Shown one piece after another: positions 2,009 to 60,000 of a stretch of 64,000 nt of DNA; position 1 is the stretch's first letter; every line of letters begins with the position of its first letter. Below the pieces are notes generated by a model. It searched no databases. It was given only the letters and a program-made list of their open reading frames with translations, and was not told the origin of the DNA. The stretch spans positions 21,514,001 to 21,578,000 of the forward strand of contig NC_043012.1 of the NCBI RefSeq assembly GCF_006345805.1, read 5' to 3'. This DNA is from Octopus sinensis. Taxonomy: Eukaryota. A program made the position numbers and the translations under genes.

Positions 2009-2481
2009 TCATATTTTGGCACAAGGCCAGCAATCTCGGGGTAGGGAGTAAGTCGATTACATTGACCTCAATGCATAACTGGTGCTTATTTTATCGACCT
2101 CAAAAAGACAAAAAGCAAAGTCGACCTTGGTGGAATTTGAACTCAGAACATTAAGACAGACAAAATGTTGCTAACCATTCTGCCTGGCATGCTAACCATT
2201 CTGCCAGCTCCCTACCTTATACAAACATATATATATATATATAAAAAGCATTGTAGAAAATGAAGGAGAGTATATTTTTCTTGAAAAAGAAATTGGTTTA
2301 TCTTAATTTTGAAAAATATAAGAAGTTTAAAAAAACTACATTATTAATGGGATGACCCAACATATATATATCATCATTATCATCATCATCATCATTTAAC
2401 GTCCGCTTTCCATGCTAGCATGGGTTATATATATATCATCATCATCATCAAAACGGACGCTAAACGATGATGATGATGATG

Positions 2482-2520
<39 letters not shown>

Positions 2521-2521
<1 letters not shown>

Positions 2522-3805
2522 TGGGTCATCCCATTAATAATGTAGTTTTTTTAAACTTCTTATATTTTTCAAAATTAAGATAAACCAATTTCCTTTTCAA
2601 TCTAAAATATACTCTCCTTCATTTTCTACAATGCTTTTCCACCTGGTAGACTTGCAAGGTCCCTTTTCTAAAATTCACTTGTCTATGACGAAAAATACTC
2701 CTCTAGTACTGATGTCATCAACAGAATTCATATATTTTTCCCTCTAAATGATTTTGAAGACTGCGGAATAAATGATAATCAGATGGGGCAACGTCTGGTG
2801 AATATGGTGGGTGGATAAGGTAGTGAGCTGGCAGAAACATTAGCATGCCAGGCGAAATGCTTAGCGGTATTTTATCTGTCTTTACGTTCTGAGTTCAAAT
2901 TCCGCCGAGGTTGACTTTGCCTTTCATCTTTCCGGGGTCAATAAATTAAGTATAAGTTGCATACTGGGGGCGTTCTAATCAACTGGTCCCATCTCCAAAA
3001 ATTTCGGGCCTTGTGCCTAGAGTGGAAAAGAATATGATGGGTGGAGCATTGACTTGAAACCAAAGCTGGTCGTTCTTCTTCTAGTGCTGACTTAAGCCAC
3101 TGAAGCTGCTCACAATAGATCTTCTTTGTTATCGTTTATAGAGAACCCATTTCTCATCACCAGTCACTATTCAGTCCAAAAAGGGTTCATTCGCAGGATG
3201 TGACAGTAAAGAAGAGCACACATTCACTCTCTGTGCGCGATAAGACTCGGAAAGTTTGTGAGGAAACCATTGATCCAATTTGCTGACTTTTCCAACGGCA
3301 TGCAGGTGTTGATGAATGATTCAATGACCAAATCCAAGCTTCTCTGCTAGTTCCTCAATACTTACAATGAGATTTTGTTCCACCAGGATTTGCAGGACAT
3401 ACTCATTGAGCTCTACAGATCTTCCAGGATGAGGTTCGTCTTTTAGGCTGTAGTTTCCGGCTCGGAATTTCTGGAACCACCGTTAACACTAGCTTATGCT
3501 TATTATCCCCATATACTGATCCCCATATACTGCATTAATATTCCTCGGACTTTCTGTTGTGCTGTTGTCTTTATTGAACTCATAAAGCAAAATATGTTGA
3601 ATATACTCCTTTGTCACTTCCATTCTAGCTTTGAAAAAAATAATTTAAAATCGAACTGCACTCTTCAAAACTTGCACTAAGAATAAAAGCAAGGTAAAAT
3701 TACAACCTGCCTTTATAGCAAGTTGATGCAGGTAGTTTATCCTGTCCCCCCTCCAACTTTTAGTTCATGCAACTGAAAAAGCTGCATTATTTATGGTATG
3801 ACCAA
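2521..3805 (-). mobile_element. Mariner (DD34D-type) transposon, both ends present, internally deleted and decayed, interrupted by a SINE
   Basis: TIRs ttgggtcatcccattaataatg / gcattatttatggtatgaccaa plus TA. Translation: MEVTKEYIQHILLYEFNK..., WFQKFRAGNYSLKDEPHPGRS, FLD*IVTGDEKW, HPPYSPDVAPSDYHLFRSL. Confidence 0.92.
2816..3030 (+). mobile_element. tRNA-derived SINE family B inserted into the mariner, 15-bp TSD
   Basis: TSD aatatg(g/a)tgggtgga at 2801-2815 and 3031-3045; body contains gcctttcatc...gtcaataaattaag (core possibly Meta-domain-like, from memory). Confidence 0.85.
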
Positions 3806-6560: not shown

Positions 6561-6927
6561 TTATTATTACCTCCACCTTAGCAAAGGCAGAGGTATTGTT
6601 TTCAGTTGTGTTTGTTTGTTTGTTTGTCCGTGGACAAGATATCTCAAGAACTGCTGGATGGATTCAGATGAACCTTTCAGGGATGTTTGGCCTCATGACT
6701 GGCACAAACTGATTAGATCTTGGGATCGATCTGGTACCGGACAAGGATTCTGGATTGTTTTTCCTGTTTATTTTTTTTACTTAATTTTTGAGAGTGATCA
6801 GGTTCATTTTTAATATTCTCGTTTGTGAGAGCAGTCAAGTTTATTTCAGATTTTTAAAAATCGTCTCTGGCTAATCATTAAGAATACGTTGCCTTGGTGA
6901 AGATTTACGCTCTAGAGTGCTCTTGTT
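6561..6927 (+). mobile_element. Helentron-associated (HINE/DINE-like) non-autonomous element
   Basis: Starts ttattacctccacc, has a (GTTT)n tract, ends gctctagagtgctcttgtt, and has no TSD. An inverted fragment of it lies at about 7640-7710. Confidence 0.5.
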
Positions 6928-7294
6928 ATTATTATTATTATTATTATACATATATATTTTTAGATTATGAGATGGCAGAACCATTAACACACTAAATGAA
7001 ATGCTTAGCAGCATTTGGTCTGTGTTCAGGTCCCGAGTTCAAATTCCACCTCTGGCACTTTACAGTGGGAGTTACACATCAAATATATTCTTTTCTGGTC
7101 TAAGCACAAGGCTCGAAATTTGAAGGGAGGGGGCCATTCGATTAGATCAACCCCAGTACGCAACTGGTACTTAATTTATTGACCCTGAAAGGATGAAAGG
7201 CAAAGTCGGCCTCAGCGGAATTTGAACTCAGAACATAAAGACAGACAACATACCGCTAAGCATTTCGCCCAGCGTGCTAATCTTTCCGCCTTAA

Positions 7295-7515
7295 CCCTTT
7301 AGTGTTCGCATTATTCTGCCAAAATTAATCCTTTTTTATCCACATTACCTTGAACTAATCAGGCATTATCTTGGAGCTATGAGATTTTGATGAGGTAGCT
7401 GTTAATTTTTAAAACGATATTGTAGGGTTGGTGTGAGAGACCAGATCTGGCCAGTTTGAACATAAAACAGGCAGAATACTTTTGGCCGGATACGGCCGGT
7501 TTAAATGCTAAAGGG
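7295..7515. mobile_element. piggyBac-like MITE
   Basis: TTAA|CCCTTTAG...CTAAAGGG|TTAA. Confidence 0.85.
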
Positions 7516-7813
7516 TTAAATGTACATGAAATATATTAGCTTTTCAAATGACTCAGTAAAAAGCTGACAAAATATGCTTGTTTTAGTTCTTGGAAACAGT
7601 CTTGAGTTGTGTGGAGTTTTGTAGCTGTCCACATAGGATCTGCTTCAAACATCCCTGAAAGTTTCATCTGAATCCATCCAGCAGTCCTTGAGATATCACG
7701 TTCAGACAGGGTTTTTTTACATGCCACTGGCATGGGGGCCAGTCACAGGATACTTTCAAGTATCCTTATTAAAAAATGAGAAATTAAGAAAGAAAAAAGC
7801 ATAATTAACTTAC

Positions 7814-7945: not shown

Positions 7946-8317
7946 CTAAAGAAAGAGGCAAATAATACATAAATTTTATTTCTCACCATTAAATTAATGA
8001 CTTTTCCAAATCAAACAGAAAAAGAGAAAAAACACAAAAATGACATATTTCAATTATGTAGAATTTGCATGGTTTTATTTAAAAGCAATATAATATTCAT
8101 AGGATTCTAGGGAAGAATTTTTATGACATAATAAACATAGAAATATTTATGGCTATGTGGTTAAGAAGTTTGCTTCCCGACCATGTGTTCAGGTTCAGTC
8201 CTGCTCCACTGAGTGGCACCTTGGACAAGTGTCATCAGCAATAGCCCCAGGTCAACCAAAGCCTTGTGGGTGGATTGGGTCAAAGCAAACTGGAAGAAGA
8301 CCATATTTTATATATAT

Positions 8318-8721
8318 ACTAGCAGAATCGCCCGGCGTTGCTCGGGTTTGTAAGGGAAATAACTACATAAGCATTTTTAGAGAGTTATAGCAAAAAAATA
8401 GCAAAAAAATGCATTAAAAATGGAAAAAAAATGATGGTAATTTTTTTTTTTAAATCGTTGACTCATCGTAAACATTTTTAGAGAGTTACTTCCCTTATAT
8501 AATAGCGAAAAATGCATTAAAATGGAAAAAAATTATGGTAAATTTTTTTTTAAATCGTAGACTCATCGTAGACGCGCGCTAATACCCAGAAGGGCTCGAT
8601 ATGAATCACGACTATAAGATACCCGAATTTGGTTAAACTGCACCGCAAAATGTGGGAGTAGTTAGGAATCTAAATCGAAGGGGACAGACACTCACACAAC
8701 TACAGTTTTATATATATAGAT
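8318..8721 (+). mobile_element. Non-autonomous Helitron-like element, copy 1
   Basis: 5' ACTAGCAGAATCGCCCGGCGTTGCTCGGG; 3' ...gacagacac...ttttatatatatagat; internal tandem repeat of about 115 bp; relatives at 43201 and 54453. Confidence 0.6.
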
Positions 8722-10899
8722 AAACATAGAAATATTTATGGCTATGTGGTTAAGAAGTTTGCTTCCCAGCCACGTGTTCAGGTTCAGTCCTGCTCCACTG
8801 AGTGGCACCTTGGACAAGTGTCATCAGCAATAGCCCCAGGTCAACCAAAGCCTTGTGGGTGGATTGGGTCAAAGCAAACTGGAAGAAGACCATATTTTAT
8901 ATATATATATATCGGGCATGGCTGTGTGGTTAGGGAGCTTGCTTCCTAGCTACATGGTTTCGGGTTCAGTCCCACTGCGTGGCACTTTGGGTAGTTGTCT
9001 TCCATTATAGCCCCGAGCCGACCGGAGCTTTGTGATTGAATTCGGTAGGTGGAAGTTACTGCCGTGTGTGTATGTGTGCGTATAGCTGCTCAGTGCCTCT
9101 CTGAAAGAGAGAGAGAGGGATATCTACACACACACACACACACACCACACACACACACATATATAAGACATTCTTTTGCAGGATATTTCGCATGCTTTCA
9201 ACGTGACATCGAAATCATGCATAAATGGCTCCTTTCACCTTTGGCTGCTATTTCTTGCATGCCCTGCTACCATGAAACAGGTACTTCGGGTATTTTATCG
9301 CAAAAGCTATTACGTGGTAGCAGGTCGTGCTAGAAATAGCAGCCAAATCTTTGGAGCTGAGATACGTTGAATGCACTTGAAAAATATTTTGTAATGGTAT
9401 TCCCTTGGGGTGATCTTTCGCTTTGACTCTCAGAACTGTCATCTGGATCAGCTGATTTTGTTTATTAATTAACGTATAGCATGAATTTTGTGCATGTGTG
9501 TGAATGACCTTGACTTAACAGCACACAATAATTGTAAGAAAGTGTTACCCTCATTCAAGCGATGGCTCCCAATTACAATTTTCTGGGTAAATATGACCAC
9601 CCATGAGGAAATATTCTTTTCTACTCTAGGCATAAGGCCTGAAATTTTGGAGGAAAGGGGCCAATCGATTAGATTGACCACAGTACACAACTGGTACTTA
9701 ATTTATAGACCCCCGAAAGGATGAAAGGCAAAGTTGACCTTGGAATTTGAACTCAGAGCATAAAGATGGACGAAATACTGCTAAGCATTTTGCCCGGCAT
9801 GTTAATGTTTCTGCCAGTTCACTGCCTTACCCATGGGGAAATACTACTTTGCTTAGAAACAAGCGAGAGTTGGCAGCAGGGAGAGCATCTAGCTGTAGAA
9901 AATTTGCCCCAGTGAATTCCGTCAGGAAAAGTGGACACAAAAACAATGATGGTGATGACAAGCAGTGTCAGTTTGTTTACATCCCTGGAACAAAGTGGTT
10001 TGGCAAACAAGACCAACAGAATAAGTACCAACTTAATAAGCACTAGTGGGGGAGGCTTTGTCTAAGTAAACCCTTCAAAGAGATGCCCCAGCATGGCTAC
10101 AGTCTCATTACTGAAACTAGTGAAAGATAAGGTACAGATATACACATAATTAATTAATTAATTAATGTACATATGTACGTACGTATGTATGTATGTGTGT
10201 GTGCATATATATATATATATTTATATAATGTACATATATAGTGATATACATACAAATGTATACTTATACATGCGCGCACGCACACACACACATACATACA
10301 TACATACATGATGGCTGCCCCCTCATTATCGAGTATGGCCATTGCACGAAGCTCAACTGTTACTGGTGCTGTGATCGAATGTGACTTTTATTTGCTTTTT
10401 AAGGCTACAGCCAGTCATTCAGTTGAGACTCACAGCACCATCAACAATCATGAACAATGTTATCATGCAATGCCTGTGCAAGAAGACTTTTTTTTAAAGT
10501 GAGAAAAGGCTGTGCATTGAATCAATCCCACTCACTAAGCAACAGCAGCCATAATCCAAAAAGAAGAACAAGTCAACATCATCGGTAACCACTGAGCCGC
10601 AGGTTTTATGTCGGAGTTATCCCAGTTACCTGTGTTACCTTCTCCTAGAAGGATGCCCTAACAAAGGCTAGGAGTCCTTCACTCCCAATGGTTTAACTGC
10701 GCAATCGGGTATTCAGTCCAATTATTTCTATGTCCCCGCACATGATACAGCCTTAAGCCATAAGAAGAAAAAAAAAAATTCCACTTTTATTGGATGGCCG
10801 TTGACTCTCAAGAGTTCCTCCGCCCTCTGATGGGTTTTGTTTTTCATCCCACAGGGTGTCCAATAAACACCCTCCTCACCAAGCAAGCTTGGTGAACCG

Positions 10900-11764
10900 G
10901 ATTACAACCTCCCACTTTGAAGGGTATACGTTTGCAATCCAGGAACTGGAAATATCAAAAAAGTACCTGATGCACAAAAGGGACTAAGATACAGGAAAAG
11001 CAGTAAAATGTGACAACCAATGCAGACTTTGTGGAGTTCACACTGAAGATATCACCCACATCATAAGCAGTTATCTGAAAATGCGATCACGGTATTATTT
11101 ACCGATGAGACATGATGTTGTAGCTAGAACACTCTATAGTGAAATCCACCAGAAAGATAACCCCAGGGACAAAAGAAATAAAAAGGAGTACCGGTGGAAT
11201 GTCCCAATGAAAACCTCAATAAAATGTAAGCACAACAAACCTCATGTAATGATTTGGAATAGAGAAGAGAAACTGTGACGATGATGAATTGTGAAAATTA
11301 GCTGCCCAGCAGATGTTAACATAAAGCTGAAGATCAGTGAAAAAGAGAATAGCTATACTGAACTATTGAGAAATCTGCAGTTACTCTATCCAGATTACAA
11401 GTTCAGATTTATATCTGTAATTATTGGGGTCCAGGGATATGTAACACACTGCCTAAATACTTATCTTGAGAAATTTGGCTTCTCAAAACCAGAAAGGAGA
11501 AAGCTAATTCGAAGATAACAGATCCAATCCATCACTAGAACTGTAAAAATCTGTAAAACTTTCCAGAAGTTTAGCATCTAAATATATATGAGCATATCTA
11601 GATATGCAACTATATGCATGAGAATACATACATAAAATAAAACATACAAATCTGCACATATACATACATACAAACAAAAATAACCTGTTGTTGACATTGA
11701 AATTCCAGTGAAGGAGTCTTGGATCTAGGTTAAAAACTGGTTCTTTATTGGCTAGAAATCTTGA
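10900..11764 (+). mobile_element. R4/Dong-like (restriction-like endonuclease) non-LTR retrotransposon, 3' fragment
   Basis: CRLCGVHTEDITHIISSY zinc knuckle, YxxMRHDVVA, NKPH..IW, ISCPADVNI..K..EK..Y..L; frameshifted and contains stops. Confidence 0.8.
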
Positions 11765-11792
11765 CATACATACATTATATATATATATATAT

Positions 11793-11825
<33 letters not shown>

Positions 11826-12509
11826 CAAATTGAGATAGGGATAGATATATCCGATATACTGCTAGTGAAGTACCCAACAAAGTTAATACATAAATGTTAA
11901 GGATTGCGATGAAATCAATTCATTTACTGTATTATATGGGCAAAGGTAAAATGATTTACCACAAATTATCTTGTATATATATATATTCCATTATTAATGG
12001 GACTAACAGAAAAGCTACTCCATCCAATGAAAGATAAATATCATTTAATATAAAAAGGCTTTAAATGTCAGCTGCTCTAAGTTCCATACCTTTGATAATA
12101 CGATTGTCAGATGAGCTTGTATAGCCTAAACCTAAATGATTACCTGATAGAACACAGCACGCTATAGAAGTATGTATCACTATTGAACTATCAGAGCTAT
12201 GTAGCTTAACTGATACACATGCACACACACACACACAGCATAACTATACAGACAATACACATTACGCTAAAGCCAGTCTTCATGCAAGCTGTCAACCATA
12301 CACTCACACACTCGTATACAATGCAAACACACGACACAAGCTTAGCTTCTCGCCTACACATATCTCTAGCTATGAACATTTATCCCATCCTTAACCACAC
12401 ACATACACACACACACACACACACACATATTGCTATAGTGATTCTGCAAGGGGGTTGGTTACATTAAGGGTACACATGAATGTGGAATACTCGGTTGCTT
12501 TTATACTAA

Positions 12510-12740
12510 GGTGGCGAGCTGGCAGAACCGTTAGCACGCCGGGCGAAATGCATAGCCGTATTTCGTCTGCCGTTGCGCTCTGAGTTCAAATTCCGCCGAG
12601 GTCAACTTTGCCTTTCATCCTTTCGGGGTCGATTAAATAAGTACCAGTTACGCACTGGGGTCGATGTAATCAACTTAATACCTATGTCTGTCCTTGTTTG
12701 TCCCCTCTGTGTTTAGCCCCTTGTGGGTAATAAAGAAATA
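12510..12740 (+). mobile_element. SINE family B, full length, 17-bp TSD
   Basis: TSD ggttgctt(t/a)tatactaa at 12493-12509 and 12741-12757. Confidence 0.88.
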
Positions 12741-12970
12741 GGTTGCTTATATACTAAATCAATGAGCAAGTAGTTGCATACATCAAACAATTAACCCCCC
12801 ACCCCATTGCCAAAAATAATGGAGATCCATTCACGCTCACTGACAGTCAAGCGTTTGTATTTGACCAGAGCTCTGGATATATTCAGATATTATGTGCTTG
12901 TGTATTTACGAGAGAAAGACAGACGGGAATCAATACATTTATTTATTCTGTGCCACTCATAACACATATA

Positions 12971-13187
12971 TAAATATGTATATATACCAATTAAGGACTG
13001 AACACGAAAAGTGGACAGTCAACATGCTAGATATAGACGTCAAATCGCCATTTTCCACAAAAGATTATGTTCTCAAATCATTTGAGAACATAATCTTTTG
13101 TGGAAAATGGCGATTTGACGTCTATATCTAGCATGTTGACTGTCCACTTTTCGTGTTCAGTCCTTAATTGGTATATATACATATTTA
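12971..13187. repeat. Perfect palindrome: 108-bp arms with a 1-nt centre
   Basis: 12971-13078 is the exact reverse complement of 13080-13187 (checked base by base). Confidence 0.97.
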
Positions 13188-13314
13188 ATCTTCGGATTCT
13201 TTTTTTAATATGCTAGACCACTGGTTTTAATTGATAAATATTGATTTCTACCCTTAATTAATTAATTTTATATAAATATGTATATATGTACGCATGTATT
13301 AATATGTATTAATA

Positions 13315-13346
<32 letters not shown>

Positions 13347-14291
13347 CATGTGTGTATGTATACATATATATGCAAAAAGAATAAGAGGCTAGCACCTATA
13401 CGCTAGCTAAAACAGCATTTTGGTAGTTATACATACATATGTACATACATACACACGAACACATACATATGATGATGATGACGATGACGACAACGATGGT
13501 AGAATCTTCTGTTGAAGACAACGTGTGTTCGTTGAAGAAGACACATCACCAGTCTAGCAAAAGGACATAGATACAGAACTGGTTATCTACATATTGAGAG
13601 AGAGCGAGTGAGAGAGAGAGAGAGAGTGAGAGAGAGAGAGAGAGTGTGTGTGTGTGTCAACCAAAATAATTTATTGTTCTAAGTAATTATGGCTGTATGC
13701 TGTCCTGTTTACTCACAGGCTGATGGTCCATCCAGTCCTGCTACACTAACTTCCATCCCTGGTTCACTCAAAGTTGAGGAAAAGAGGCGGGGGGGGGGGA
13801 GAATCAGGCTCATAAACATAACAAGTGGAGTAAACCAGTGAGATGGAGCCTCCAGCTGACTGGGTGATGCAGCTGCTAGAAATAGAAGTCACATCTCTCA
13901 CAATTCACACTCTCCTATCTTAAATATCTTAGGAAACAGACTTTATCATTCAAATTTATGGAGCTGCCTGGCCCATAGGTGCCTTTGGAAGAGTCCACTC
14001 TGTTGCAAGAACTCAAGCCAGGTCTGAGAATAACATCCTTCTTTCTTCACAGCAAACCAGAAGGCTCTGATTTTAAAAAAAAAAGTCATGTGCACTGTCT
14101 CATGAGTCAGCCATAATGAAAAAAAAAATGAAGGGACAGTCACTGCTGGAACAATTTTAACCCTTTGACTAACTAATTAAATATCATGGTCATTCCAATA
14201 ACAATATTAATTATCTACCAAAAAAATTAGAACTGATATTATCTGCTTCTGCAGTACTTTTTCAGTATCTCCTGTTTCTCCTATTCACACA

Positions 14292-14625
14292 TGGCTCAGT
14301 GGTTAGAGTGTCAGGCTCACAATCATGAGGTAGTGAGTTCAATTGCCGGACCGGGCTGTGTACTGTTTTTAAGCAATACACCATATTTCACGTTGCTCCA
14401 GTTCACTTAGCTATAGAAACTGAGTTGCAACATCACTGGTGCCAAGCTGTATCGGCCCCTTTGCCTTTCCCTTGGATAACATTGGTGACACGAAAAGGGG
14501 AAGCTGGTATGCATGGGCGACTGCTGGTCTTCCCACAGACAACCTTGCCCAGACTTGTGCCTCAGAGGGGAACTTTGTAGGTGTAATCATATGGTCAGTC
14601 ATGACTGAAGGGGGTCTTTACCCTT
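14292..14625 (+). mobile_element. tRNA-derived SINE family C (CORE-like central domain)
   Basis: ggctcagtggttagag (A box)...gagttcaattgcc (B box), followed by a tttcacgttgctccagttcac segment. Confidence 0.6.
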
Positions 14626-16440
14626 TACCAATTTTACTATTCACCCCATATTAACAAAGAACCTACAAAGAATGGTCTAAACACTGGTGACCAGTAGCTC
14701 TCCTTCCTGGCTGAGTTACCATGCCAGTCAGGTTAGTTGGTCAACACAGCAGTTGAACAGGCAGAAGAACTAGTCTACACATCTTTTAGCTGTTTCAGTC
14801 ATTAGACTGTGGCCATGCTGGAGCACCACCTTCAATTTTCAGTTGAATGAATTTACCCCAGGACTTAGCTTTTTTTTTAAGCTTGATATTTTATTCTGTC
14901 AGGCTGTTTTGCTGAACTGCTAAGTTATGGGGACATAAACACACAAACACCAGTCATCAAATGGTGGTGGGTGACAAACACAAAGACACACACACACACA
15001 CACATACATGTGTGTGTGTGTGTGAGTGAGTGTGTGTACGTGCGATGAGCTTTATTCAGTTTCCGTCAACCAAATCAACTCACAAGGCTTTGGTCAGCAC
15101 AAGGCCATAGTAGAAGATACTTGCCCATCGTGTCACACAGTAGGACTGAACGCAGAACCATATGGTTGGGAAGCAAGCTTCTTACCACACAGCTACGTCT
15201 GCGCCTGCACACAGACTGAGAAGCAAAGCTGTCGCATGTAAAGTGTGAACAGATGCCAAAGGACAGATAAGTAGAGAGATAAATCATTTGAGAGAAAGAA
15301 AAGGTGAGAGAGAGAGAGAGAGAGAGAGAAGAAAAAGAGACGAGAGAAAAAGAGAGAGGCAGAGATATGAATGTATGTGAAATTGCTGTCATAAAAGGTC
15401 AGATTTTCAGCAATTTATTTTCTGCTGACCAAAACATTGATCTATAGTTCCTAAATAGTATGCCAGGACCCTTGTTTTATGTTTATCTTCTTTCCAAAAT
15501 TTTCAAGTCCAAAGTTCGTAGGGTTTCTTCAAGGTCAGGCATTTTTTAACACAAGGAAATCTGATGTGTGTGTGTGAGAGAGAGACAGACAGACAGACAG
15601 AGAGTATATCACCATCATCACCACTGATTTAATGTCCACTTTTCCACATTTGCATGGGTCATATGGCATTTGTTGAAGCAGATTTTCTGTGGCCAGATGC
15701 CCTTCCTGTCACTAGCCCTCACTTGGCACCAAGCAAGGTAACATTTTCACATGACCAGACACGTTTTCATGGAAGGCTAGAAATGATTGACAGCACAGGT
15801 ATGACCGTAACACTCAAGCATGATTCAGGTTTTGGCTAACCACATCAAATGATATGGGATAACTGGGGATTACTTACAGTAAACAATCTCATGGTATTTC
15901 ACCCGTTGGATTATAAACAGTTGGCCAAGTGTACAGCACGGACATTACGGTTCAACTGGGGTCTGGGAAGCCAGAAGGCTGCACCAGGCCCAGTCTGATC
16001 TAGAAACATTGCCAGATCAGACTGGGCCTGGTGCAGTCTTCTGGCTTCCCAGACCCCAGTTGAACCGTCCAACCCATGCTAGCATGGAAAGCGGACGCTA
16101 AATGATGATGATGATGACGATGATGGAGAAATATACTTCTACATATTTTTTTTAAATTATTATTACTGTATCTTACTGTGAAACATTTAACCAGGATGAA
16201 TCTTAATGCAGCTGAACTAACAGGATGCAAATAACCACCACATAACAAAATATCCATACAGCAGAAACATATACCAGACGGAGGTTTAAGGAGAATATAT
16301 TGTATAAAAGACAGTAACAATAAAAAAAAACAGAGATGATGTATAATTCTCCACACACACACACATATATTTACAACAGGCTTCTTTCAGTTTCCATCTA
16401 CGAAATACATTTACAATGCTTTGATTGACCTGTAGCTATA

Positions 16441-16660
16441 CAAGGAGGTGCTGAAAAGTTCCTGGCTTTAAAGGTATCGTGAAAGGGTTGGTTGGAAGCC
16501 CAACCCTCTGGAGTTCTTTTACAGGGTATAGAAAAACTGAAGGACCCCTGCAATATGTGTGTGAATCTGAGAGGGGAATTTGGTGAATAAAATCATAATT
16601 AACTCATCCTCTTGTATTTTTTTTTTACCCAAAGCCAGGAACTTTTCAGTACCCCCTTCA
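16441..16660. mobile_element. Mariner-derived MITE with TA TSD
   Basis: TIRs ...gtgctgaaaagttcctggcttt / aaagccaggaacttttcagtac...; carries a transposase C-terminal remnant; inverted relative at 52659-52876. Confidence 0.85.
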
Positions 16661-16769
16661 TATATTTGTCCAAGACACCATGCAGGGTGGCTGAACTCCA
16701 AAAATGTGATTGAGAAGCAAACTGCTTAACCACACAGCTATATTTCAAAGAGTAAAGTAAGCTCCTTAC

Positions 16770-17281: not shown

Positions 17282-17644
17282 AAATCGAAATCGATCAACA
17301 TCAATGGAAATTGCAGCTGTGATACCAGTGCCGGTGGTATGTAAGAGAACCATCCGAACGTGGCCGTTGCCAGCGCCGCCCCGACTGGCCTCGTGCCAGT
17401 GGCACACAAAAAGCACCATCCGATCGTGGCCGTTTGCCAGCCTCGTCTAGCACCTGTGCCAGTGGCACATAAAAAGCACCCACTACACTCATGGAGTGGT
17501 TGGCGTTAGGAAGGGCATCCAGCCGTAGAAACATTGCCAAATCAGACTGGGCCTGGTGCAGCCTTCTGGCTTCCCAGACCCCAGTTGAACCGTCCAACCC
17601 ATGCTAGCATGGAAAGCGGACACTAAACGATGATGATGATGATG

Positions 17645-17645
<1 letters not shown>
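17282..17645 (+). mobile_element. RTE LINE 3'UTR fragment. Similar copies at about 30176-30470(-), 35440-35786(+), 45300-45828(+), 46345-47040(+, two), 49251-49730(-), 57278-57875(-), 59520-60325(+), 63717-64000(-)
   Basis: Same sequence as the 3'UTR attached to the RTE ORF at 23090-23700; (GAT)n tail. Confidence 0.85.
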
Positions 17646-17680
<35 letters not shown>

Positions 17681-20503
17681 GTCCTCTCATCCTTCGCCCT
17701 TGTGGTAAATAAATGAAATCATTATTATTATTATTATTAAAGGTTGTGAGCTGGTGGTTAGCAGCTTTTCATCTATCTTTATGTTCTGAGGTCAAATCCC
17801 GCCAAGGTTGACTTTCCTCCTTTTGGGGTTGATAAAACAAGTACCAGTCAAATACTCGGATCAATGTAATTGACTTCTCCTTCCCCTCACAAACTGCTGG
17901 CCCAGTGCCAAAATTAGAAAGCATCGTTATTATTATTGAGTGAGAGAGCAGCACATGCCATCAAAGTGACCCTGGAGTACAATTATACGAAGCCCAGTAT
18001 ACCCATCATGACTAGCCATCTGATAAGTATAAACCAAGCACAAGCATTACAACCATATGTGCACGACAAGGTGGTCTCATATCAAGATAAACAGCGCATG
18101 ACCTTGCAGGTGGGGCCCAGTTAGAATTTTCTTCAGGAGAAATTCAATGGGATTGAAACTAGAACCACATAGTTGTGAAGTGAACTTTTTAACTACCTAG
18201 TCATGCCCACATCCTTAAGAGAGATATAACCAAAAGCTATTCATATGTTATTTAGTTACAGTTATGAATTCCATTTGAAAACCTGAATGAAATATCATCG
18301 TCATTTAACGTCCACTTTTCAATGCTTGCATGGGTCAGACAAAATTTATTGAGATTTTCTATGGCCAGAGGCCCTTCTTGTTGCCAACCCTTACCAATTT
18401 CCAAGCAATATTTCCTCATGAACAGACATGGAAGACTGGAAATGAACATTATTTGTTTGATGTTGATGCTCCTTTGCAATCATCACATGATGTCATGGAT
18501 ATACACAAACACACAGACACAGAAACACAAACACACAGACACATATACACACATACATATGACAGGCTTCTTTCAGTTTCTGTCTACCAAATCCATTCTC
18601 AAGGCTTTGGTAAGCCTGAGGCTATAGGAAAGACATTAGACATTTACTCAAGGTGCCAAAGTGGGTTTCTTAACCACACAGCCATGCCTTCACCCATACA
18701 TTTTCGTATTCCTTAGAGTGTTTGTAAAGGGACACAAATTCCTTCCAGAAACATGAAAAATCAAATTTCAAGCTTGGAAAAAGACTAAGATTAGTAAACA
18801 AACATCTAATTAGTGAATGGCATCAAATCTTTACTACTGTCTTGAGTTAATTAGTGCACCTGAGTTTGACAATGAAATTGGTGGGGTTATACAAACACGC
18901 AAAAGTTTCTAAACACATTAATAAAACATTAATCAATCAATGACAAAACTGGAACACACACAAACTCACAGTATAATTTCAGATTAATGACAGGTTGCTG
19001 GAGTTGTTGTTTAACCCTTTAGATACCAGCCCAACTGAAATTTTCCCTGGTTTGAAAATACAAGTTTCCTATTTTAGAGTGATCTAAATTAGGATTTCCG
19101 ATGAAAATTTCTTGATCATTTTTGTTCCATGCATCAACTTAATAATAACAAGGTTATTTTACTTCATTCTTTGTTATTTTTTTAATTAATTGAAACATAG
19201 GTGCAGGTATGGCTGTGTGGTAAGAAGTTTGCTTCCCAGCCACATGGTTGAAGGTTCAGTCCCACTGCATGGCACCTTGGGCAAGTGTCTTCTACTATAG
19301 CCCTAGGCCTTCTGGGTGGATATGGTAGATATATTTCTTTATTGCCCACAAGGGGCTAAACATAGAGGGGACAAACAAGGACAGACAAAGGGATTAAGTC
19401 GATTACATCGACCCCCAGTGCGTAACTGGTACTTTAATTATCGACCCCGAAAGGATGAAAGGCAAAGTCAACCTCGGCGGAATTTGAACTCACAACGTAA
19501 CGACAGACGAAATACGGCTATGGCGTAGATAACAAATGAAAAGAGTCCATCATGAATATGTATAACTTTGCATCAACATGTACCTTCTTGCGACAATGTA
19601 GCCTTTAATCTAATCAAGATATCCTTGGCCTGAAGAGTAGCCAGCATTATACACCTCACTTGGATCTTACCATTTGAAACATATGAGAAAAAGAAACCAT
19701 TTGAATAAGTTTAAAAACCAGAATAAGCTTAAAAAAAAAATAAAACAAGTTCTGGGATCAATGTGTTTGACAAAACCCTTCAAGGTGGTGCAGCAGTATG
19801 GCCATAGTGCAGTGGCTGAAACCAGTAAAAGATAAAGATGGTGAAATGCAGAATTGTTAGAGCATCAGACAATACATGGCTGTATTTAGCTACAGCCCTT
19901 TTGAACTCTGAGTTCAAATTCTTCCAAGGTCAACTGTACCATAACAGTTCTGGAGACACAAAAAGGCATCCAGTACAGACTTAGTATTTGGTAATCAATC
20001 CAAACAGCAACAAAACCAGACTCACGAGGACTCTTTACTTTTCTTGATGTCATGGTAAACTTTACAGCTGGCACCATGAAAAATGTACTCATTGCATTCT
20101 GTAAAATTGTCAGTGTTAGGAAGGACACGCAGCTGTAGAAACAAAGCCCAAAAATGGGACGCAACATTGGAGGAAGATGTGGTTCTGACCAGTTGAATTC
20201 TCTCAAAATGTTCCATCCATGCCAGCATGGATAAGCAGATATAAAATGATGATGTTGATGATGATGACATATATATGTATATATCTATGTATGTGCATAT
20301 ATATATATATATTCCTTTATTTCTTTCAGCCATTTTGACTGCGGCCATGCTGGAGTACCACCTTTAGTTGAGAAAATCGAATCCAGGACTTATTCTTTGT
20401 AAGCCTTGTACTTATTCTATCGGTCTCTTTCACTGAAACGCTAAGTTACGGGGACATAAACACACCAGCATCAGTCGTCAAGCGATGTGGGGGGGGGGGG
20501 CAA

Positions 20504-22130: not shown

Positions 22131-23089
22131 ATTTAACTAACCATCATCATGATATCTGGTTGGAAATAAATATACCTCAAAGGAAGTTTCTATGCCATCA
22201 TTTGATCCACTAATCTCAAATCTCACTTTTACTAACTTGAAAACAGGAAAGCACACATCAGATAAAATACACCCTAATATCAGAAAGAAAAAAAACAGGG
22301 TGGTCACAGCTGAAATATATCTTGGTCATACATCTGCATGATCAACCCTAACCCTAACCCTAAGGGGTCAAACAACAGCAATGATCTTTAAGTGGCATTT
22401 TATCTGTTTTAGCTTAGAAGTTTCACAATGAAGAAAGTTCTAAGTAAGGCACAGCTTTAAATAACTGAAGCCTATTTCATGTCATTGTATTAACAGCTGC
22501 TACAGTGTCAACAATTTATCATATCTTTCTAAAGGCAAGCAACGTTATGTATGTTTCTGATCAATAGTGCTGATAATAAAGATATTGTTTAGCAAGCCAG
22601 TGGTAAGAGCTTCAATTCTTAACAATAGTAGAGATTCAGTTGTAAAGGCTTTGATATCTGGCGGCATGATGTACTTTCTCACCCAACTATAATGCATTTA
22701 ACTGAAAAAAGACGTTTATCTGATCACTGTGGTTAAGGCTGCAGTTCGTCAGGCTAAAAAAAATTTACCTTCGCTGTGCAACTCATTAAACAAGCAATGG
22801 TCATATTCATTACTGAGTCAACTTCCATCACATCATCATCATCAGCAGTTTAATGTTTATGTTTCCATGCTTGCATAGGTCAGACAGAAATCATTGAAGC
22901 AGATTCTCTGCAGCTGGATGCCCTTCCTGTCACCAATCCTCAACTGTCTTCAAGCAAGCTAATATTCTGTTATGGCTGGACATGTCCACACAGAAGACAT
23001 GAAACAAAGCACACTGCTAGAATGACAGTGGCATTCTTTATAACTATCTCATATCATGACAAGGAGACGTAAACATAGATGCCTCTCTC

Positions 23090-24410
23090 ATCATCATCAT
23101 CATCATCATTAGCGTCCATTTTCCATGCTAGCATGGGTTGGACGGTTCTACTGGGGTCTGTGAAGCCAGAAGGCTTCATCAGGCCCAGTCAAATCTGGCA
23201 GTGTTTCTACGGCTGGATGCCCTTCCTAACGCCAACCACTCCGTGAGTGTAGTGGGTGCTTTTTACGTGCCACCCGCACTGGTGCCAGACAGAGCTGGCA
23301 AACGGCCACGAACGGATGGTGCTTTTTATGTGCCACCGGCACGAGGGCCAGGCGAGGCTGGCAACGGACACGAAACGGGGCGGTGCTGGCAACGGTCGCG
23401 AAACGGAAAGTTCTCTTACATGCCACCGGCACTGGTAACACATCTGCAATTTCCATTGATCGATTTCCATTGATCGATTTCGATTCTGATCCTCACTTGC
23501 CTCAATGGGTCTTCACAAGCAGAGTTTCGACATGCCACCGCACTGGTAGCACATCCGCAATTTCCATTGATCGATTTCGATTCTGATCCTCACTTGCCTC
23601 AACACGTCTTCACAAGTAGAGTTTTGTGTCCCAAGAAGGGAAGGTATGCATACGTAGGCTGGCTCCATCCCATGTAGAAGGCCACGGGTTGTGGACTCAC
23701 TTGTCCTGCCGGGTCTTCTCGCGCACAGCACACTTCCAGAGGTCTCGGTCTCTAGTCATTTCCTCAGTGAGACCTAAAGTTCGAAGGTCGTGCTTCACCA
23801 CCTCGTCCCAGGTTTTCCTGGGTCTGCCTCTTCCACAGGTTCCCTCAACCGCTAGGGTGTGGCACTTTTTCACACAACTATCTTCATCCATTCTCGCCAC
23901 ATGACCATACCAGCGCAAACGTCTCTCTTGCACACCACAACTGATGCTTCTTAGGTCCAGCTTTTCTCTCAAGGTACTTACACTCTGCCGAGTGTGAGTA
24001 CCGGCATTACACATCCATCGGAGCATACTGGCTTCATTTCTAGTGAGCTTACGCATATCCTCAGCAGTCACGGCCCATGTTTCACTGCCATGTAGCATGG
24101 CTGTTCGTACACACGCATCATACAGTCTGCCTTTCACTCTGTGCGAGAGGCCTTTTGTCACCAGCAGAGGTAAGAGCTCTCTGAACTCTGCCCAAGCTAT
24201 TCTTACTCTAGCAGTTACACTTTCAGCACACCCGCCCCCGCTGCTGACTTGGTCACCTAGGTAACGGAAACTATCAACTATTTCTAGTTTTTCTCCCTGG
24301 AAAGTGACGGAAGTTGGTCTCAGAGCATTTTCAGTGTTTATTGTTCCTGAGCATCTGCCACATACAAAAACCATCTTCCTAGTTAGCCTTCCTTTGACAT
24401 TGCTGCATCT
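23090..24410 (-). mobile_element. RTE LINE, 5'-truncated, uninterrupted ORF C-terminus (about 235 aa), 3'UTR and (GAT)n tail
   Basis: ORF 23697..24437: ...EIVDSFRYLGD...KGRLYDACVRTAMLHGSETW...RLRWYGHVARM...GRGRPRKTW, typical of the region downstream of the RTE RT domain. Confidence 0.93.
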
Positions 24411-24699
24411 ATATATATATATATATATATTAATCAAAATAAAAACATGATGCCAAGGATTCAGCAGTACATATGTTTCGGGCCTTTATTAGACGGATTT
24501 ACAACAATGCATAATGTGTGTCTATGGCCTTCTTTAGCCGCGCACAATTACTACTTCAAGGACATGTATTACATCAAAAATTCTACGTTGGGGATGCAAA
24601 TCCTCTCAGTCGCGTACGACATAATGCGGTACCAGCACAAAAATGAAGTGTCCATCCCGTCCTTCTCTCAATGTGTATATATATATATATATATATATA

Positions 24700-28538: not shown

Positions 28539-28906
28539 ACTAGCACTATGACCCAGCATTGCTGGGTCATAGTGCTAGTGCATGCATATACAGCTGCGTG
28601 CTTGCCCACATACACGCGAGTACTGTCCAAATATCTGACCAATCACATACAGCTAGCTGGCATTCAATTGGCATATCAAGTTTCAGGCACTTTGATTGGG
28701 TTTTGAATAGAAAATTCAGAAAAAAGTCACTTCTATTGATTTTTTAATGGCTTTGTGGGGTGACTAGGGAAATGTAAAGACGTGCACGACCACCCTTGGA
28801 CAGTTTTGAATGACCATAGAAAGTGCAAGCCTTCTAACTGAAAAATTGTGGATTTGTATAAAGGATACACACAGACAGACATTTTGCCATTTATATAAAG
28901 AGAGAT
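28539..28906 (+). mobile_element. Helitron-like element beginning with a perfect 41-bp palindrome
   Basis: ACTAGCACTATGACCCAGCA-T-TGCTGGGTCATAGTGCTAGT; 3' end acagacagac...tttatataaagagagat. Confidence 0.55.
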
Positions 28907-30175: not shown

Positions 30176-30469
30176 CATCATCATCATCATCGTTTAACGT
30201 CCGTTCTCCATGCTAGCATGGGTTGGACGGTTCGACCGGGGATCTGGGAAGCCAGAAGGCTGCACCAGGCTCCAGTCTTATCTGGTAGTGTTTCTACAGC
30301 TGGATGCCCTTCCTAACGCCAACCACTCCGTGAGTGTAGTGGGTGCTTTTTACGTGCCACCTGCACAGGTGCCAGGCGAGGCTGGCAATGGCCACGGTCG
30401 GATTGGTGTATTTTATGTGCCACCGGCACGGAAGCCAGACGAGGCGGTGCTGGCATCGGCCACGAGTCG

Positions 30470-30695
<226 letters not shown>

Positions 30696-39170: not shown

Positions 39171-39495
39171 AGCTCTCTTAATCGTCTACGAACGTTTGGT
39201 TATAAGTAAACCAGAGTTAACTCCCATGAGTATGTAATGACAATTTGTTCATAGAAGTCCTGCATTCACGGGCACTTTAACCGGTTGAGTGCACTTTGTT
39301 GTATAATACGACTAAAAAAGACACTTTCTTTATAAAGTGTCTTGGATGTAGACGTGGAATAAACAAACTACAGCTTAGGGCCTCAAAATAATTTATTTAT
39401 AGACATGTATGTTTTCAATTTTTGTGAGATCTTTAAGCGTAATTTTTTTTTTTTAATCATGAACCTCTATCTTTCATAGCTTAGATCCTCTATAA

Positions 39496-39921
39496 GGGCG
39501 ATCTTTCGTCTCTAGTAGACCTCTCCGTCGATTTCCGTAAAAATTTTTTTTTTTGTTTTTACATATGGGCTTGCGGGAACTTTTGAAGTAATATACATAC
39601 ATATACACATACACCGAGTAAAAAATTTCAGTTATCTCTTTCTTTCACACATTACTCTGTCTCTTCACACACACTAACAGAAGCACTTCACTTACACAAC
39701 ATACTGTCTGTCTCCCACACCCCATCAAACACACGCACACACATATACATCAATGCTTCACATGCACGGTAACTTAAAAAGAACTTCCCTCGTCATACAA
39801 TCGCTTTCTCTTAGTCTCTTTCGCTCTCATTACTTCAAAAGTTCCCGCAAGCCCATATGTAAAAAAAAAAATTTTTTTACGGAAATCGACGGAAAGGTCT
39901 ACTAGAGACGAAAGATTGCCC
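39496..39921. mobile_element. PIF/Harbinger-like MITE, ~95-bp TIRs, TAA TSD
   Basis: TAA|GGGCGATCTTTCGTCTCTAG...CTAGAGACGAAAGATTGCCC|TAA; arms at 39496-39592 and 39829-39921. Confidence 0.88.
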
Positions 39922-40614
39922 TAAGTTTAAATCGTATGCTTGGCCGAGTTATTAGGATTGTCGATCCGCTGGTTGAAAGCCTGCTGTGAACAGTTGAATT
40001 TTTACATTAGGCATTCGTCCTTATTTACATTTTCCGTTGTAGCAGAGTGTCGAGTTCAAAGCTTCGCAACAGACTGACATGTTCCCCAAGCGTTTAGGAA
40101 ACCTTGCAGAAAGTCCAGTCATACCTACAATGCTGAATGGTTTTCGGTAACATACACAGCTCAGACTTTTGTGGAAAAGGCAACTGGAATAAAGTTCATT
40201 CGACAGCTCTCTCTTTCTCTCTCTCTCCAAACACACACACTGTGATTAAAGTTTTGCTTCCCAACCACATGGTTTCGTGTTCAATTCCACTACGTGGTAC
40301 CTTGGTTTAGTACTTTATACTGTAGCCTCAAGCAGACCAAAGCCTTGTGAGTGAATTTGGTAGACGAAAATTGAAAAAAACCAAGGCCGGTTTATGGGAT
40401 TACATTTGGTTTCACGTCTATAAAGCGCTTTGCTTTACGGCGTATCATCAGATCCCAAAACCTGTTGGCTTAAGGCCTCTTTAGCGAGTTGCTTCTCTAG
40501 ACGTAAAACCAAAGATAATTCCATAAACCGGCCTACTCTAACTTCATATCATACACTGCTCTATAACTTAGATTGTGCTTCTTTTTCGGATTTATGTTCT
40601 GCCGACGATATATT

Positions 40615-55895: not shown

Positions 55896-56454
55896 GCAAC
55901 TCACTTCAAAGAAAAAACACACTGTGACCGTGCCCTTGAATATTTTGATGTGTTCTACAAACCACTTTATGGGAAACTCTGGCCTTCGATTCGGATTTCT
56001 CTCCTCTCAAATCATAAATACTGTGCTCTTGTCAATAACTTCAGCTTCGTTGAAAACACCACCAAGTTTCTTGAGAAACTTGGCTGTCATGATATTATAC
56101 AGCGTGCTAAGACTACAGAACCTCTGTTACATGAAGATTCTGTTGAGAGAAGCAAAATAAGTGATATTTCAGAATCAATTGTAGAGAACACTGTTGGTTC
56201 CGATGATTCAGATGTTGAAGACCATAATCGAACTAATTTGACTGCATTTTTACCAGTGAAGAAAGTATATTCATCTAAACAGCTTCAGAAGAAAGAAGAA
56301 TTGGAACAAAGTGTGTATATGCCACAGAACATTGCATTAAAAGTGGTTCCTTGCAGTATTTCAGCTCTCCCAGAACATCTGAAAGTTTACTGCTTTAAAC
56401 GTGGAAATACCGGTACATTTCCATCTCCCAAGATTCACAAAACTGGTCTTTTAG
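55896..56454 (+). CDS. NSUN4: NSUN4 coding exon 2 (559 nt)
   Basis: tatag|GCA ACT CAC...GGT CTT TTA G|gtaagt; overlaps ORF 55950..56465; includes an acidic low-complexity segment (SDDSDVED) not seen in my recollection of vertebrate NSUN4. Confidence 0.95.
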
Positions 56455-59440: not shown

Positions 59441-59765
59441 TTTCTGTTACCATAGCTGTGTTAATAAGAATGGCTGGATCTTTTCTCCATGCTCATGTTT
59501 AATGGCCGAATATTGCTACCTTCTGAAGTGACGAGTGAAATTGCAGTTGTTGCTGATGCCAGTGCTGTCTGACTGGCACTTGAAAAGCACAGTTCATGCA
59601 TTGGGCCTCGTGGAGACAGTGATGTCAGACCAAGTGAGATTGTAGTTGATGCCTGTGTCACATAACTGGCCTGTGAAAAGCACCCTCCAATTGTTGGGCA
59701 ATACGCTGTGCTTGTGAAGACCTGTTGAACTGAGTGAAATCATAGTCATGGCTGATGCCAGTACC

Positions 59766-60000
59766 TATTTCTTTACTACCCACAAGGGGCTAAACATAGA
59801 GGGGACAAACAAGGACAGACATAGGTATTAAGTCGATTATATCGACTCCTCCAGTGCGTAACTGGTACTTAATTTATCGACCCCGAAAGGATGAAAGGCA
59901 AAGTTGACCTCGGCGGAATTTGAACCCAGAACGTAACGGCAGACGAAATACGGCTACGCATTTCGCCCGGTGTGCTAACGTTTCTGCCAGCTTGCCGCCT
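59766..60000 (-). mobile_element. SINE family B inserted into an RTE 3'UTR, 9-bp TSD
   Basis: TSD GCCAGTACC at 59757-59765 and 60001-60009. Confidence 0.87.

What the first reader, a model, noticed from the sequence alone, without database searches (positions are those of the whole stretch)
12971..13187. Perfect 217-bp palindrome (108-bp arms, 1-nt loop) in UBE2J1 intron 2
Seen: zero mismatches over 108 bp, built from non-repetitive sequence found nowhere else in this window. The outermost TA dinucleotides could be a TSD. Established: spacer-less palindromes this long are unstable and normally decay fast; when transcribed they give perfect dsRNA for ADAR or Dicer. Inference: a very young fold-back element, a gene-conversion-maintained hairpin (hpRNA/endo-siRNA source or splicing modulator), or a fold-back sequencing artefact. 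This is the strongest unexplained structure in the window.
Basis: partly seen in the sequence, partly recalled or inferred. Interest (0 to 1): 0.7.

Follow-up and report, generated by a model that had tools for sequence, protein, structure and literature searches.

The report
Young fold-back palindrome in a UBE2J1 intron
A perfect 217-bp DNA palindrome deep inside an intron of a mollusc UBE2J1 gene is most likely a recent, neutral fold-back copying accident, one of several in this window, and not a mobile element, a functional RNA gene or an assembly error.

Summary
Arms 12971-13078 and 13080-13187 are 108 nt long and 100% complementary, with one central C. The 92-nt core of each arm occurs nowhere else in the 64-kb window. 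The palindrome lies about 3.6 and 5.0 kb from the nearest splice sites in intron 2 of a minus-strand UBE2J1 gene.

It is not alone. The same window holds three more fold-back palindromes:
- a perfect 20-nt-arm palindrome, also with a 1-nt centre
- a 55-nt-arm palindrome sitting exactly at the 5' truncation point of a SINE
- a decayed palindrome with about 165-nt arms and an asymmetric centre

Block shuffles give perfect arms of 14 nt at most. Aged relatives, gene order that stays collinear across the site, and arms far shorter than whole-read fold-back artefacts all argue against an assembly error.

Best reading: a one-step snap-back or template-switch inverted duplication at a stalled or broken DNA end, young (under about 1.4% divergence per arm) and neutral. 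As a by-product it puts a 108-bp perfect dsRNA hairpin into the pre-mRNA.

Still open: a palindromic MITE, an artefact, or a functional hairpin RNA. No reads or related genomes could be reached, so none of these is excluded. This is a known kind of structure and of modest interest.

The parts
12971..13078 (.). Left arm of the palindrome (108 nt: 16 nt of TA-rich outer end plus 92 nt of unique core).
   Evidence: The core is unique in the window.
13079..13079 (.). Single unpaired central base (C on the + strand, G in the pre-mRNA).
13080..13187 (.). Right arm, the exact reverse complement of the left arm.
12967..12985 (+). 19-nt direct repeat, copy 1 (TATATAAATATGTATATAT). It spans the left edge of the palindrome: 4 nt of flank plus the first 15 nt of the left arm.
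   Evidence: (family D4). Most of its 12-mers occur only here and at copy 2. The three 12-mers lying within the arm's outer 15 nt also appear in the right arm as reverse complements, and ATATGTATATAT is a common microsatellite word with 9 occurrences.
13269..13287 (+). 19-nt direct repeat, copy 2, lying 302 bp downstream of copy 1. It may be a target-site duplication, or it may be independent evidence that the left flank and left arm are natively contiguous.
7946..16769 (-). UBE2J1 intron 2, the host of the palindrome. It is transcribed on the minus strand.

Best explanation
The palindrome is a real, evolutionarily young inverted duplication of local intron sequence, made in one step by fold-back (snap-back or template-switch) DNA synthesis. 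A 3' DNA end at about 13079, either a stalled nascent strand or the end of a nick or break, re-annealed a few bases back on its own or the complementary strand. It copied about 108 nt in reverse and was then rejoined to the original duplex. The rejoining happened in a TA-rich, partly self-complementary stretch.

The break may have come from the LINE/SINE retrotransposition machinery (an endonuclease nick followed by snap-back synthesis). That machinery demonstrably left at least one fold-back of this kind elsewhere in the window.

The structure is selectively neutral. Its expected fate is loss of symmetry at the centre and divergence of the arms, as in the older palindrome at 2244-2638. As a by-product, every UBE2J1 pre-mRNA carries a perfect 108-bp dsRNA hairpin, which is a likely ADAR substrate.

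Shown: the structure, its uniqueness in the window, its intronic position and its companions. Inferred: that it is real, its mechanism, its neutrality and which arm is the original.
For: 1. It is a perfect reverse-complement copy of adjacent unique sequence with a 1-nt centre. This is the signature of one-step template switching, which is documented to create perfect hairpins of up to 83 nt in primates.

2. The same design recurs in this window (shuffles give perfect arms of 14 nt at most):
- Palindrome A, 28539-28579: 20-nt arms, 1-nt centre, perfect, unique sequence, next to a TA-rich tract.
- Palindrome B, 15947-16068: 55-nt arms with one mismatch and a 12-nt loop. The right arm and loop are the body of a 5'-truncated SINE. 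The left arm is an inverted copy of that SINE's last retained 55 nt. Four other SINE copies continue with normal SINE sequence at that point.
- Palindrome C, 2244-2638: arms of about 165 nt made of unique sequence, (TA)n, (ATC)n and a SINE 3' end, around an asymmetric centre of about 50 nt.
B and C carry mismatches and microsatellite length differences, so they are aged genomic features, not assembly errors.

3. Snap-back synthesis at cDNA 3' ends during target-primed reverse transcription is experimentally documented. So are L1-endonuclease-induced inverted duplications of flanking DNA with 2-bp microhomology, some without any inserted element. If the right arm is the new copy, the junction with the right flank shares 2 nt (AT); this is read directly from the sequence.

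4. The 19-nt direct repeat runs from the left flank into the left arm and recurs 302 bp downstream. This suggests the left flank and left arm are natively contiguous, or that the repeat is a 19-bp target-site duplication.

5. Exons 1 to 4 keep their order and orientation across the site, so there is no misjoin.

6. Zero differences in 108 paired sites gives a 95% bound of under about 1.4% substitutions per site per arm. That is younger than B (1 difference in 55) and than the SINE copies, which are 77-96% identical to copy B.
Against: - No read-level or cross-species evidence could be obtained. No protein from this species is in the searched collections, and arm k-mers are absent from the metagenome, prokaryote and viral collections. 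Reality and ancestral state therefore remain inferred.
- 108 nt is longer than the template-switch events reported so far (up to 83 nt).
- No retroelement fragment sits at the centre of this palindrome, unlike B and C.
- No target-site duplications were found for B or C, so the retrotransposition link is circumstantial for the main palindrome.
- The 19-nt direct repeat is TA-rich and could be coincidental.
Confidence: 0.58

Rival explanations
1. It is a palindromic non-autonomous DNA transposon (a MITE or foldback-type element) that inserted recently at a TA dinucleotide. The two arms would be its full-length terminal inverted repeats.
For: - Its size (213-217 bp), moderate AT-richness (68%) and hairpin potential fit MITEs.
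- The outermost TA/TA is compatible with a Tc1/mariner-type target-site duplication.
- Several other inverted repeats that are unique in the window could be other MITE families (39495-39922, 6638-7697, 44612-45197).
- A 64-kb window has almost no power to detect a family of about 1000 copies in a gigabase-scale genome.
Against: - There is no second copy of the core in the window, exact or diverged.
- The TA is uninformative because it lies in a mirrored TA-rich stretch, and no longer target-site duplication exists.
- MITEs normally have an internal non-palindromic segment and imperfect terminal repeats. A 108/108 match with a 1-nt centre is the signature of a fresh inverted duplication.
- Palindromes B and C in the same window are demonstrably built from local and SINE sequence, not from a transposon family.
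Confidence: 0.13
2. It is an assembly, polishing or sequencing artefact, such as a fold-back chimeric molecule or a local mis-assembly, and is not present in the animal's genome.
For: - Fold-back chimeras are a known long-read artefact and can recur at the same site.
- Perfect identity and a spacer-less centre are what an artefact would give.
- Exact long palindromes are uncommon in most genomes.
- No reads could be inspected.
Against: - Reported fold-back artefacts fold the whole read at its midpoint, so the arms are about half a read long. They occur in about 0.6% of ONT genomic reads and virtually never in HiFi reads.
- An artefact here would need two precise switches 108 nt apart and a return to collinear unique sequence. 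Gene order is intact on both sides.
- Graph assemblers tend to break palindromes, not create them.
- The window has three more palindromes of the same design, two of them with accumulated mismatches.
- No adapter or vector sequence sits at the centre, and the plasmid collection gives no match.
Confidence: 0.2
3. It is a selectively maintained hairpin RNA gene (an endo-siRNA source, a miRNA-like precursor or an ADAR-recruiting element), with arm identity kept by gene conversion.
For: - It is transcribed within a broadly expressed gene and folds into a perfect 108-bp duplex.
- Template switching is known to seed new hairpin genes and can re-perfect their stems.
Against: - No Rfam family reaches its gathering score. 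The sub-threshold hits are generic long-hairpin models, for example plant MIR859 at 67 bits against a threshold of 130.
- A 108-bp stem with a 1-nt loop is far from the roughly 35-bp stem and 10-nt-or-longer loop preferred for miRNA processing.
- It lies 3.6-5 kb from the splice sites.
- There is no second locus or target match in the window.
- Perfect identity is explained more simply by youth.
- No conservation or expression data are available.
Confidence: 0.05

Closest known systems
Template-switch mutations (the Ripley model; the four-point model of Loytynoja and Goldman; Monttinen et al. on de novo hairpins and miRNAs)
   Same: A single event writes the exact reverse complement of neighbouring sequence next to it. 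This gives a perfect stem from previously unstructured DNA, often in introns.
   Different: Reported events are mostly tens of bases, up to 83 nt. This one is 108 nt with a 1-nt centre. The ancestral state needed to call a template-switch mutation could not be reconstructed here.
Snap-back 5' junctions and endonuclease-induced inverted duplications during non-LTR retrotransposition (R2 PRINT insertions; L1-induced break-end remodelling)
   Same: A 3' end primes synthesis on its own strand. This produces an inverted copy of cDNA and/or flanking genomic DNA with a tiny hairpin and about 2 bp of microhomology. Palindromes B and C in this window have exactly this topology at truncated SINE ends.
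   Different: The main palindrome has no recognisable retroelement at its centre. The only hint of retrotransposition is a 19-nt direct repeat flanking a 302-bp interval.
Human palindromic AT-rich repeats (PATRR17-long at 187 bp, PATRR11, PATRR22)
   Same: They are spacer-less, nearly perfect palindromes of about 190-600 bp that persist in the germline. Their derived alleles have lost central symmetry, which parallels the fresh palindrome here and decayed palindrome C.
   Different: PATRRs are defined by AT-richness and by mediating recurrent translocations. This palindrome is only 68% AT, and its behaviour in vivo is unknown.
Palindromic MITEs and foldback elements
   Same: They are short, AT-leaning and hairpin-forming, and insert at TA.
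   Different: There is no evidence here of multiple copies, of a real target-site duplication, or of an internal non-repeat segment.
Drosophila-type hairpin RNA (hpRNA) loci
   Same: They are long intramolecular inverted repeats that give Dicer substrates.
   Different: hpRNA loci are conserved, often have tandemly repeated imperfect arms, and have matching target genes. None of this could be shown here.

Membership tests
Template-switch mutation (TSM) | The new segment is an exact reverse complement of sequence within the same replication-fork neighbourhood. | tested here: met
   108/108 complementary and directly adjacent.
Template-switch mutation (TSM) | An outgroup or ancestor lacks the inverted copy, so the change is explained by a single switch-and-return path. 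| not testable with these tools
   No genome of the same or a sister species could be reached.
TPRT snap-back junction or endonuclease-induced inverted duplication | The inverted copy abuts the 5' end of a truncated retroelement, or an endonuclease nick site. | tested here: inconclusive
   This is met for palindrome B and for C. For the main palindrome no retroelement sequence is recognisable at the centre, and the segment 13080-13268 has no other copy in the window.
TPRT snap-back junction or endonuclease-induced inverted duplication | A target-site duplication flanks the whole insertion. | tested here: inconclusive
   A 19-nt exact direct repeat lies at 12967-12985 and 13269-13287, but it is TA-rich. 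No target-site duplication was found for B or C.
MITE or foldback DNA transposon | Multiple dispersed copies exist. | tested here: inconclusive
   There are no further copies in 64 kb. Genome-wide copy number could not be tested.
MITE or foldback DNA transposon | A target-site duplication lies immediately outside the terminal inverted repeats. | tested here: not met
   The only candidates are a 2-nt TA and a 3-nt TAA at offset positions, within a TA-rich context. Nothing is 4 nt or longer.
PATRR-like unstable palindrome | A near-perfect palindrome of about 200 bp or more, without a spacer. | tested here: met
   217 bp, perfect, 1-nt centre.
PATRR-like unstable palindrome | It is AT-rich throughout and polymorphic, with alleles that have lost central symmetry. 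| tested here: inconclusive
   The arms are 68% AT; the outer and central 18-nt blocks are 78-83% AT and the rest 61%. Polymorphism could not be tested.
Known RNA family (miRNA, hpRNA or other Rfam family) | A match at the family's gathering score. | tested here: not met
   There are no hits at gathering score in the whole window. Only sub-threshold generic hairpin hits appear at the locus.
hpRNA or endo-siRNA locus | 21-22-nt small RNAs come from the stem, and the locus or a target is conserved. | not testable with these tools
   No expression or comparative data are available.
Long-read fold-back artefact | The arms are about half a read long (kilobases), and the sequence continues on the opposite strand rather than returning. 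| tested here: not met
   The arms are 108 nt, both flanks are unique and collinear, and exon order is intact.

The most novel reading that the evidence does not exclude
Fold-back synthesis at retrotransposition-induced or TA-tract-induced DNA ends may be a frequent, ongoing source of long perfect hairpins in the introns of this mollusc (probably a cephalopod). This would continually seed new dsRNA substrates for ADAR or Dicer. On this reading the 217-bp palindrome is a freshly born member that is already processed, either hyper-edited or diced into endo-siRNAs.
Probability: 0.1. Interest if true: 0.6.

Novelty: new member of a known kind. Interest (0 to 1): 0.3.

Why it matters
If it is real, this is a clean, datable example of a palindrome caught at birth. 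Older stages of the same life cycle lie a few kilobases away: one mismatch, then an asymmetric centre with microsatellite growth. Two of those older companions are anchored at truncated SINE ends.

That makes the locus a convenient natural series for two questions. The first is how spacer-less palindromes arise and decay in an animal germline. The second is whether retrotransposition machinery is a major source of long intronic dsRNA in a lineage known for heavy RNA editing.

On its own, one neutral intronic palindrome is a curiosity and not a discovery.

Tried and rejected
- I tried to reach orthologous or independent copies of the locus through proteins. A UBE2J1 query of 97 aa returned only short fragments, best 87% identity. 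A query padded to 286 aa returned full-length proteins, but the best was the gastropod Pomacea at 91%, with no same-species or sister-species entry. No comparable intron could therefore be fetched.
- The 79-aa ORF across the palindrome has no relative among 5.8 billion proteins and no Pfam domain. Ten window ORFs are not in the collection.
- Arm 22- and 23-mers are absent from the metagenome, prokaryote-genome and viral collections. These collections do not hold animal genomes, so this says little.
- The plasmid collection gives no match, which rules out an obvious vector origin.
- Rfam gives nothing at gathering score and only generic hairpin noise at E < 1.
- A 10-bp target-site duplication (GTATATATAC) was considered and rejected. 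The 10-mer is self-complementary, and the mirror symmetry continues 7 nt beyond it (TAAATAT / ATATTTA), so the whole 108 nt is inverted repeat.
- A piggyBac-type TTAA reading was rejected for the same reason.
- No target-site duplications were found for palindromes B and C.
- A tandem-duplication reading of the 19-nt direct repeat was rejected, because nothing else aligns between the two intervals.

Full report
**Observation**

Positions 12971-13078 and 13080-13187 are perfect reverse complements over 108 nt, separated by a single C at 13079. The symmetry ends there, because 12970 and 13188 are both A. Chance cannot produce this: local-composition shuffles of the window give perfect non-simple arms of 14 nt at most.

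The outer 16 nt of each arm (TAAATATGTATATATA) resemble the TA-type microsatellites that litter the window. The inner 92 nt have no other copy in the 64 kb, exact or diverged. The best local alignment scores 20, against 18.5 +/- 2.1 for shuffled queries.

**Context**

A probe with vertebrate UBE2J1, followed by inspection of splice sites, places a UBE2J1 orthologue on the minus strand:

| Exon | Coordinates | Note |
|---|---|---|
| 1 | 38875-38845 | MQSQYNMRSP, GT donor |
| 2 | 16843-16770 | AG acceptor, GT donor |
| 3 | 7945-7814 | |
| 4 | 4052-3968 | |

It is 3.6 kb from the donor and 5.0 kb from the acceptor.

The closest proteins in the public collection are molluscan, with Pomacea at 91%. 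The abundant SINE with a (GAT)n tail looks octopod to me, but that rests on memory only. The left flank at 12571-12743 is another SINE-like repeat with more than ten copies in the window.

**Is it real?**

I could not reach reads, a second assembly or a sister species:
- No same-species protein exists in the searched collections.
- Arm k-mers are absent from the metagenome, prokaryote and viral collections.

The case therefore rests on internal evidence and on published descriptions of artefacts.

First, exon order and orientation are intact across the site. The structure is a local addition of 108-109 bp with two precise breakpoints, not a misjoin. Published long-read fold-back artefacts are whole-read palindromes that fold at the read midpoint. 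They are seen in about 0.6% of ONT genomic reads and essentially never in HiFi reads. Graph assemblers tend to split palindromes rather than invent them.

Second, and more telling, the window holds three further palindromes of the same design:
- **A, 28539-28579.** 20-nt arms, a 1-nt centre, perfect, made of unique sequence, and abutting a TA-rich tract.
- **B, 15947-16068.** 55-nt arms with one mismatch and a 12-nt loop. The loop and right arm are the body of a 5'-truncated SINE whose (GAT)n tail follows. The left arm is an inverted copy of that SINE's own last 55 nt. Four other SINE copies continue with ordinary SINE sequence at that point.
- **C, 2244-2638.** The arms run through 119 nt of unique sequence, (TA)n, (ATC)n and 11-32 nt of a SINE 3' end, up to an asymmetric centre of about 50 nt. 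The two arms differ in microsatellite length and in a cluster of mismatches.

B and C have aged, so they are genomic features and not assembly errors. With one perfect long, one perfect short, one slightly diverged and one decayed palindrome in 64 kb, a fresh member is what a steady birth-and-decay process predicts.

**Mechanism**

The signature is an exact reverse complement of adjacent sequence with an almost absent loop. That is the signature of one-step fold-back synthesis. Two documented routes produce it.

1. Replication template switching creates perfect hairpins in a single event, with lengths of up to 83 nt reported in primates.
2. Snap-back synthesis can occur at a free 3' end. During target-primed reverse transcription the cDNA 3' end can prime synthesis on the cDNA itself, or on nearby target DNA, before the 5' junction forms. 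L1-endonuclease-induced breaks give inverted duplications of flanking genomic DNA with small hairpins and about 2 bp of microhomology, sometimes with no inserted element at all.

B fits the cDNA snap-back exactly. C fits a snap-back that ran through a very short SINE copy into the flank. The main palindrome has no retroelement at its centre, so for it the second route is only circumstantial.

Two details bear on which arm is the original:
- If the right arm is the new copy, its junction with the right flank shares 2 nt (AT). The empty site would then read ...CTCAAATC|ATCTTCGG... (read directly from the sequence).
- A 19-nt direct repeat (TATATAAATATGTATATAT) spans the left flank/arm boundary at 12967-12985 and recurs at 13269-13287. 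Most of its 12-mers occur only at these two sites. The exceptions are the three within the arm's outer 15 nt, which also appear in the right arm as reverse complements, and one common microsatellite word.

The direct repeat has two possible meanings. It may show that the left flank and left arm are natively contiguous, which makes the left arm the original. Alternatively it may be the 19-bp target-site duplication of a 189-nt insertion (13080-13268) whose 5' end snapped back, as in B, and joined the target through 15 nt of homology. The two models predict different empty sites, and both are testable.

**Age and stability**

Zero differences over 108 paired sites, including three CpGs per arm, bounds divergence at under about 1.4% per arm at 95% confidence. 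That makes it younger than B and much younger than the SINE copies, which are 77-96% identical to copy B.

The 187-bp human PATRR17-long is a nearly perfect palindrome that segregates in the population and shows negligible cruciform extrusion at physiological salt. Its shorter alleles have asymmetric centres, which parallels palindrome C.

**Function**

Nothing supports a function:
- No Rfam family reaches its threshold in the window. At relaxed thresholds only generic long-hairpin models score, at about half their gathering score or less.
- The ORF across the palindrome has no homologue and no domain.
- The site is far from the splice sites.
- Identical arms give no covariation signal.

The pre-mRNA would nevertheless contain a 108-bp perfect duplex (-188.7 kcal/mol, z = -29). 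From established ADAR and Dicer biochemistry this should be edited or cleaved. I regard that as a consequence of the structure, not as its purpose.

**Rivals**

- **Palindromic MITE (0.13).** It cannot be excluded without a genome-wide copy count. It is disfavoured by the lack of a real target-site duplication, by the perfect spacer-less symmetry, and by the clearly non-transposon origin of B and C.
- **Artefact (0.20).** It remains possible because no reads were seen.
- **Maintained hairpin RNA gene (0.05).** It has no positive evidence.

**Verdict**

The most likely explanation is a young, neutral fold-back inverted duplication, a new member of a known kind of structure. The more interesting lead is the recurrence of such palindromes in this window and their association with truncated SINE ends and TA tracts.

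Noticed in passing
window 15947-16068: Palindrome B has 55-nt arms (one mismatch) and a 12-nt loop, and sits at the 5' truncation point of a SINE. The left arm is an inverted copy of the SINE's own last retained 55 nt, whereas other SINE copies continue normally there. It looks like a cDNA snap-back junction from target-primed reverse transcription. No target-site duplication was found.
   Followed up: yes
window 2244-2638: Palindrome C is old and about 395 bp long. Its arms contain 119 nt of unique sequence plus (TA)n, (ATC)n and 11-32 nt of a SINE 3' end, around an asymmetric centre of about 50 nt. The two arms differ in microsatellite length. It is nested between two inverted SINE copies (2000-2223 / 2812-3035).
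   Followed up: partly
window 28539-28579: Palindrome A is a perfect 41-bp palindrome (20-nt arms, 1-nt centre) of unique sequence in UBE2J1 intron 1. It is flanked by TA-rich microsatellite-like sequence, so it has the same design as the main finding at a smaller scale.
   Followed up: partly
window 12967-12985 and 13269-13287: An exact 19-nt direct repeat (TATATAAATATGTATATAT) brackets the palindrome plus 81 nt of its right flank. It may be a target-site duplication of a 302-bp insertion, or a coincidence of TA-rich sequence.
   Followed up: partly
window 39495-39592 / 39829-39922; 6638-6689 / 7646-7697; 44612-44687 / 45120-45197: Three more local inverted repeats are unique in the window: arms of 52-98 nt, 85-96% identical, with spacers of 236-956 nt. 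None has a convincing target-site duplication. They may be MITE-like elements or older inverted duplications.
   Followed up: partly
window, many sites (e.g. 17526-17646, 46924-47040, 23088-23209, 30178-30296; a second family at 12571-12743, 59763-59938, 19332-19502): There are two abundant SINE-like families, one of them with a (GAT)n tail. Many copies lie in inverted pairs within UBE2J1 introns (e.g. 474-602 / 1395-1523 and 48003-48096 / 48184-48277), which would form extensive intronic dsRNA.
   Followed up: partly
window 23697-24437 (minus strand): A 246-aa ORF reads to me like the C-terminal part of a non-LTR retrotransposon reverse transcriptase. Pfam gave no hit at E <= 0.01, and the exact sequence is not in the protein collection.
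   Followed up: partly
window 55950-56465 (plus strand): A 171-aa ORF without low-complexity sequence may be an exon of a neighbouring gene. The only Pfam hit is weak and below threshold (JAKMIP_CC3, E = 0.006).
   Followed up: partly
window 30491-30689: A long (TA)n tract of about 200 bp, with interruptions, is itself a quasi-palindrome. TA tracts adjoin the outer or inner ends of three of the four fold-back palindromes (the main one, A and C).
   Followed up: no
tool behaviour: The hits listed by the search for homologous proteins fell within about 0.75-1.75 times the query length. Padding a partial query with X to full length recovered the full-length orthologues.
   Followed up: yes
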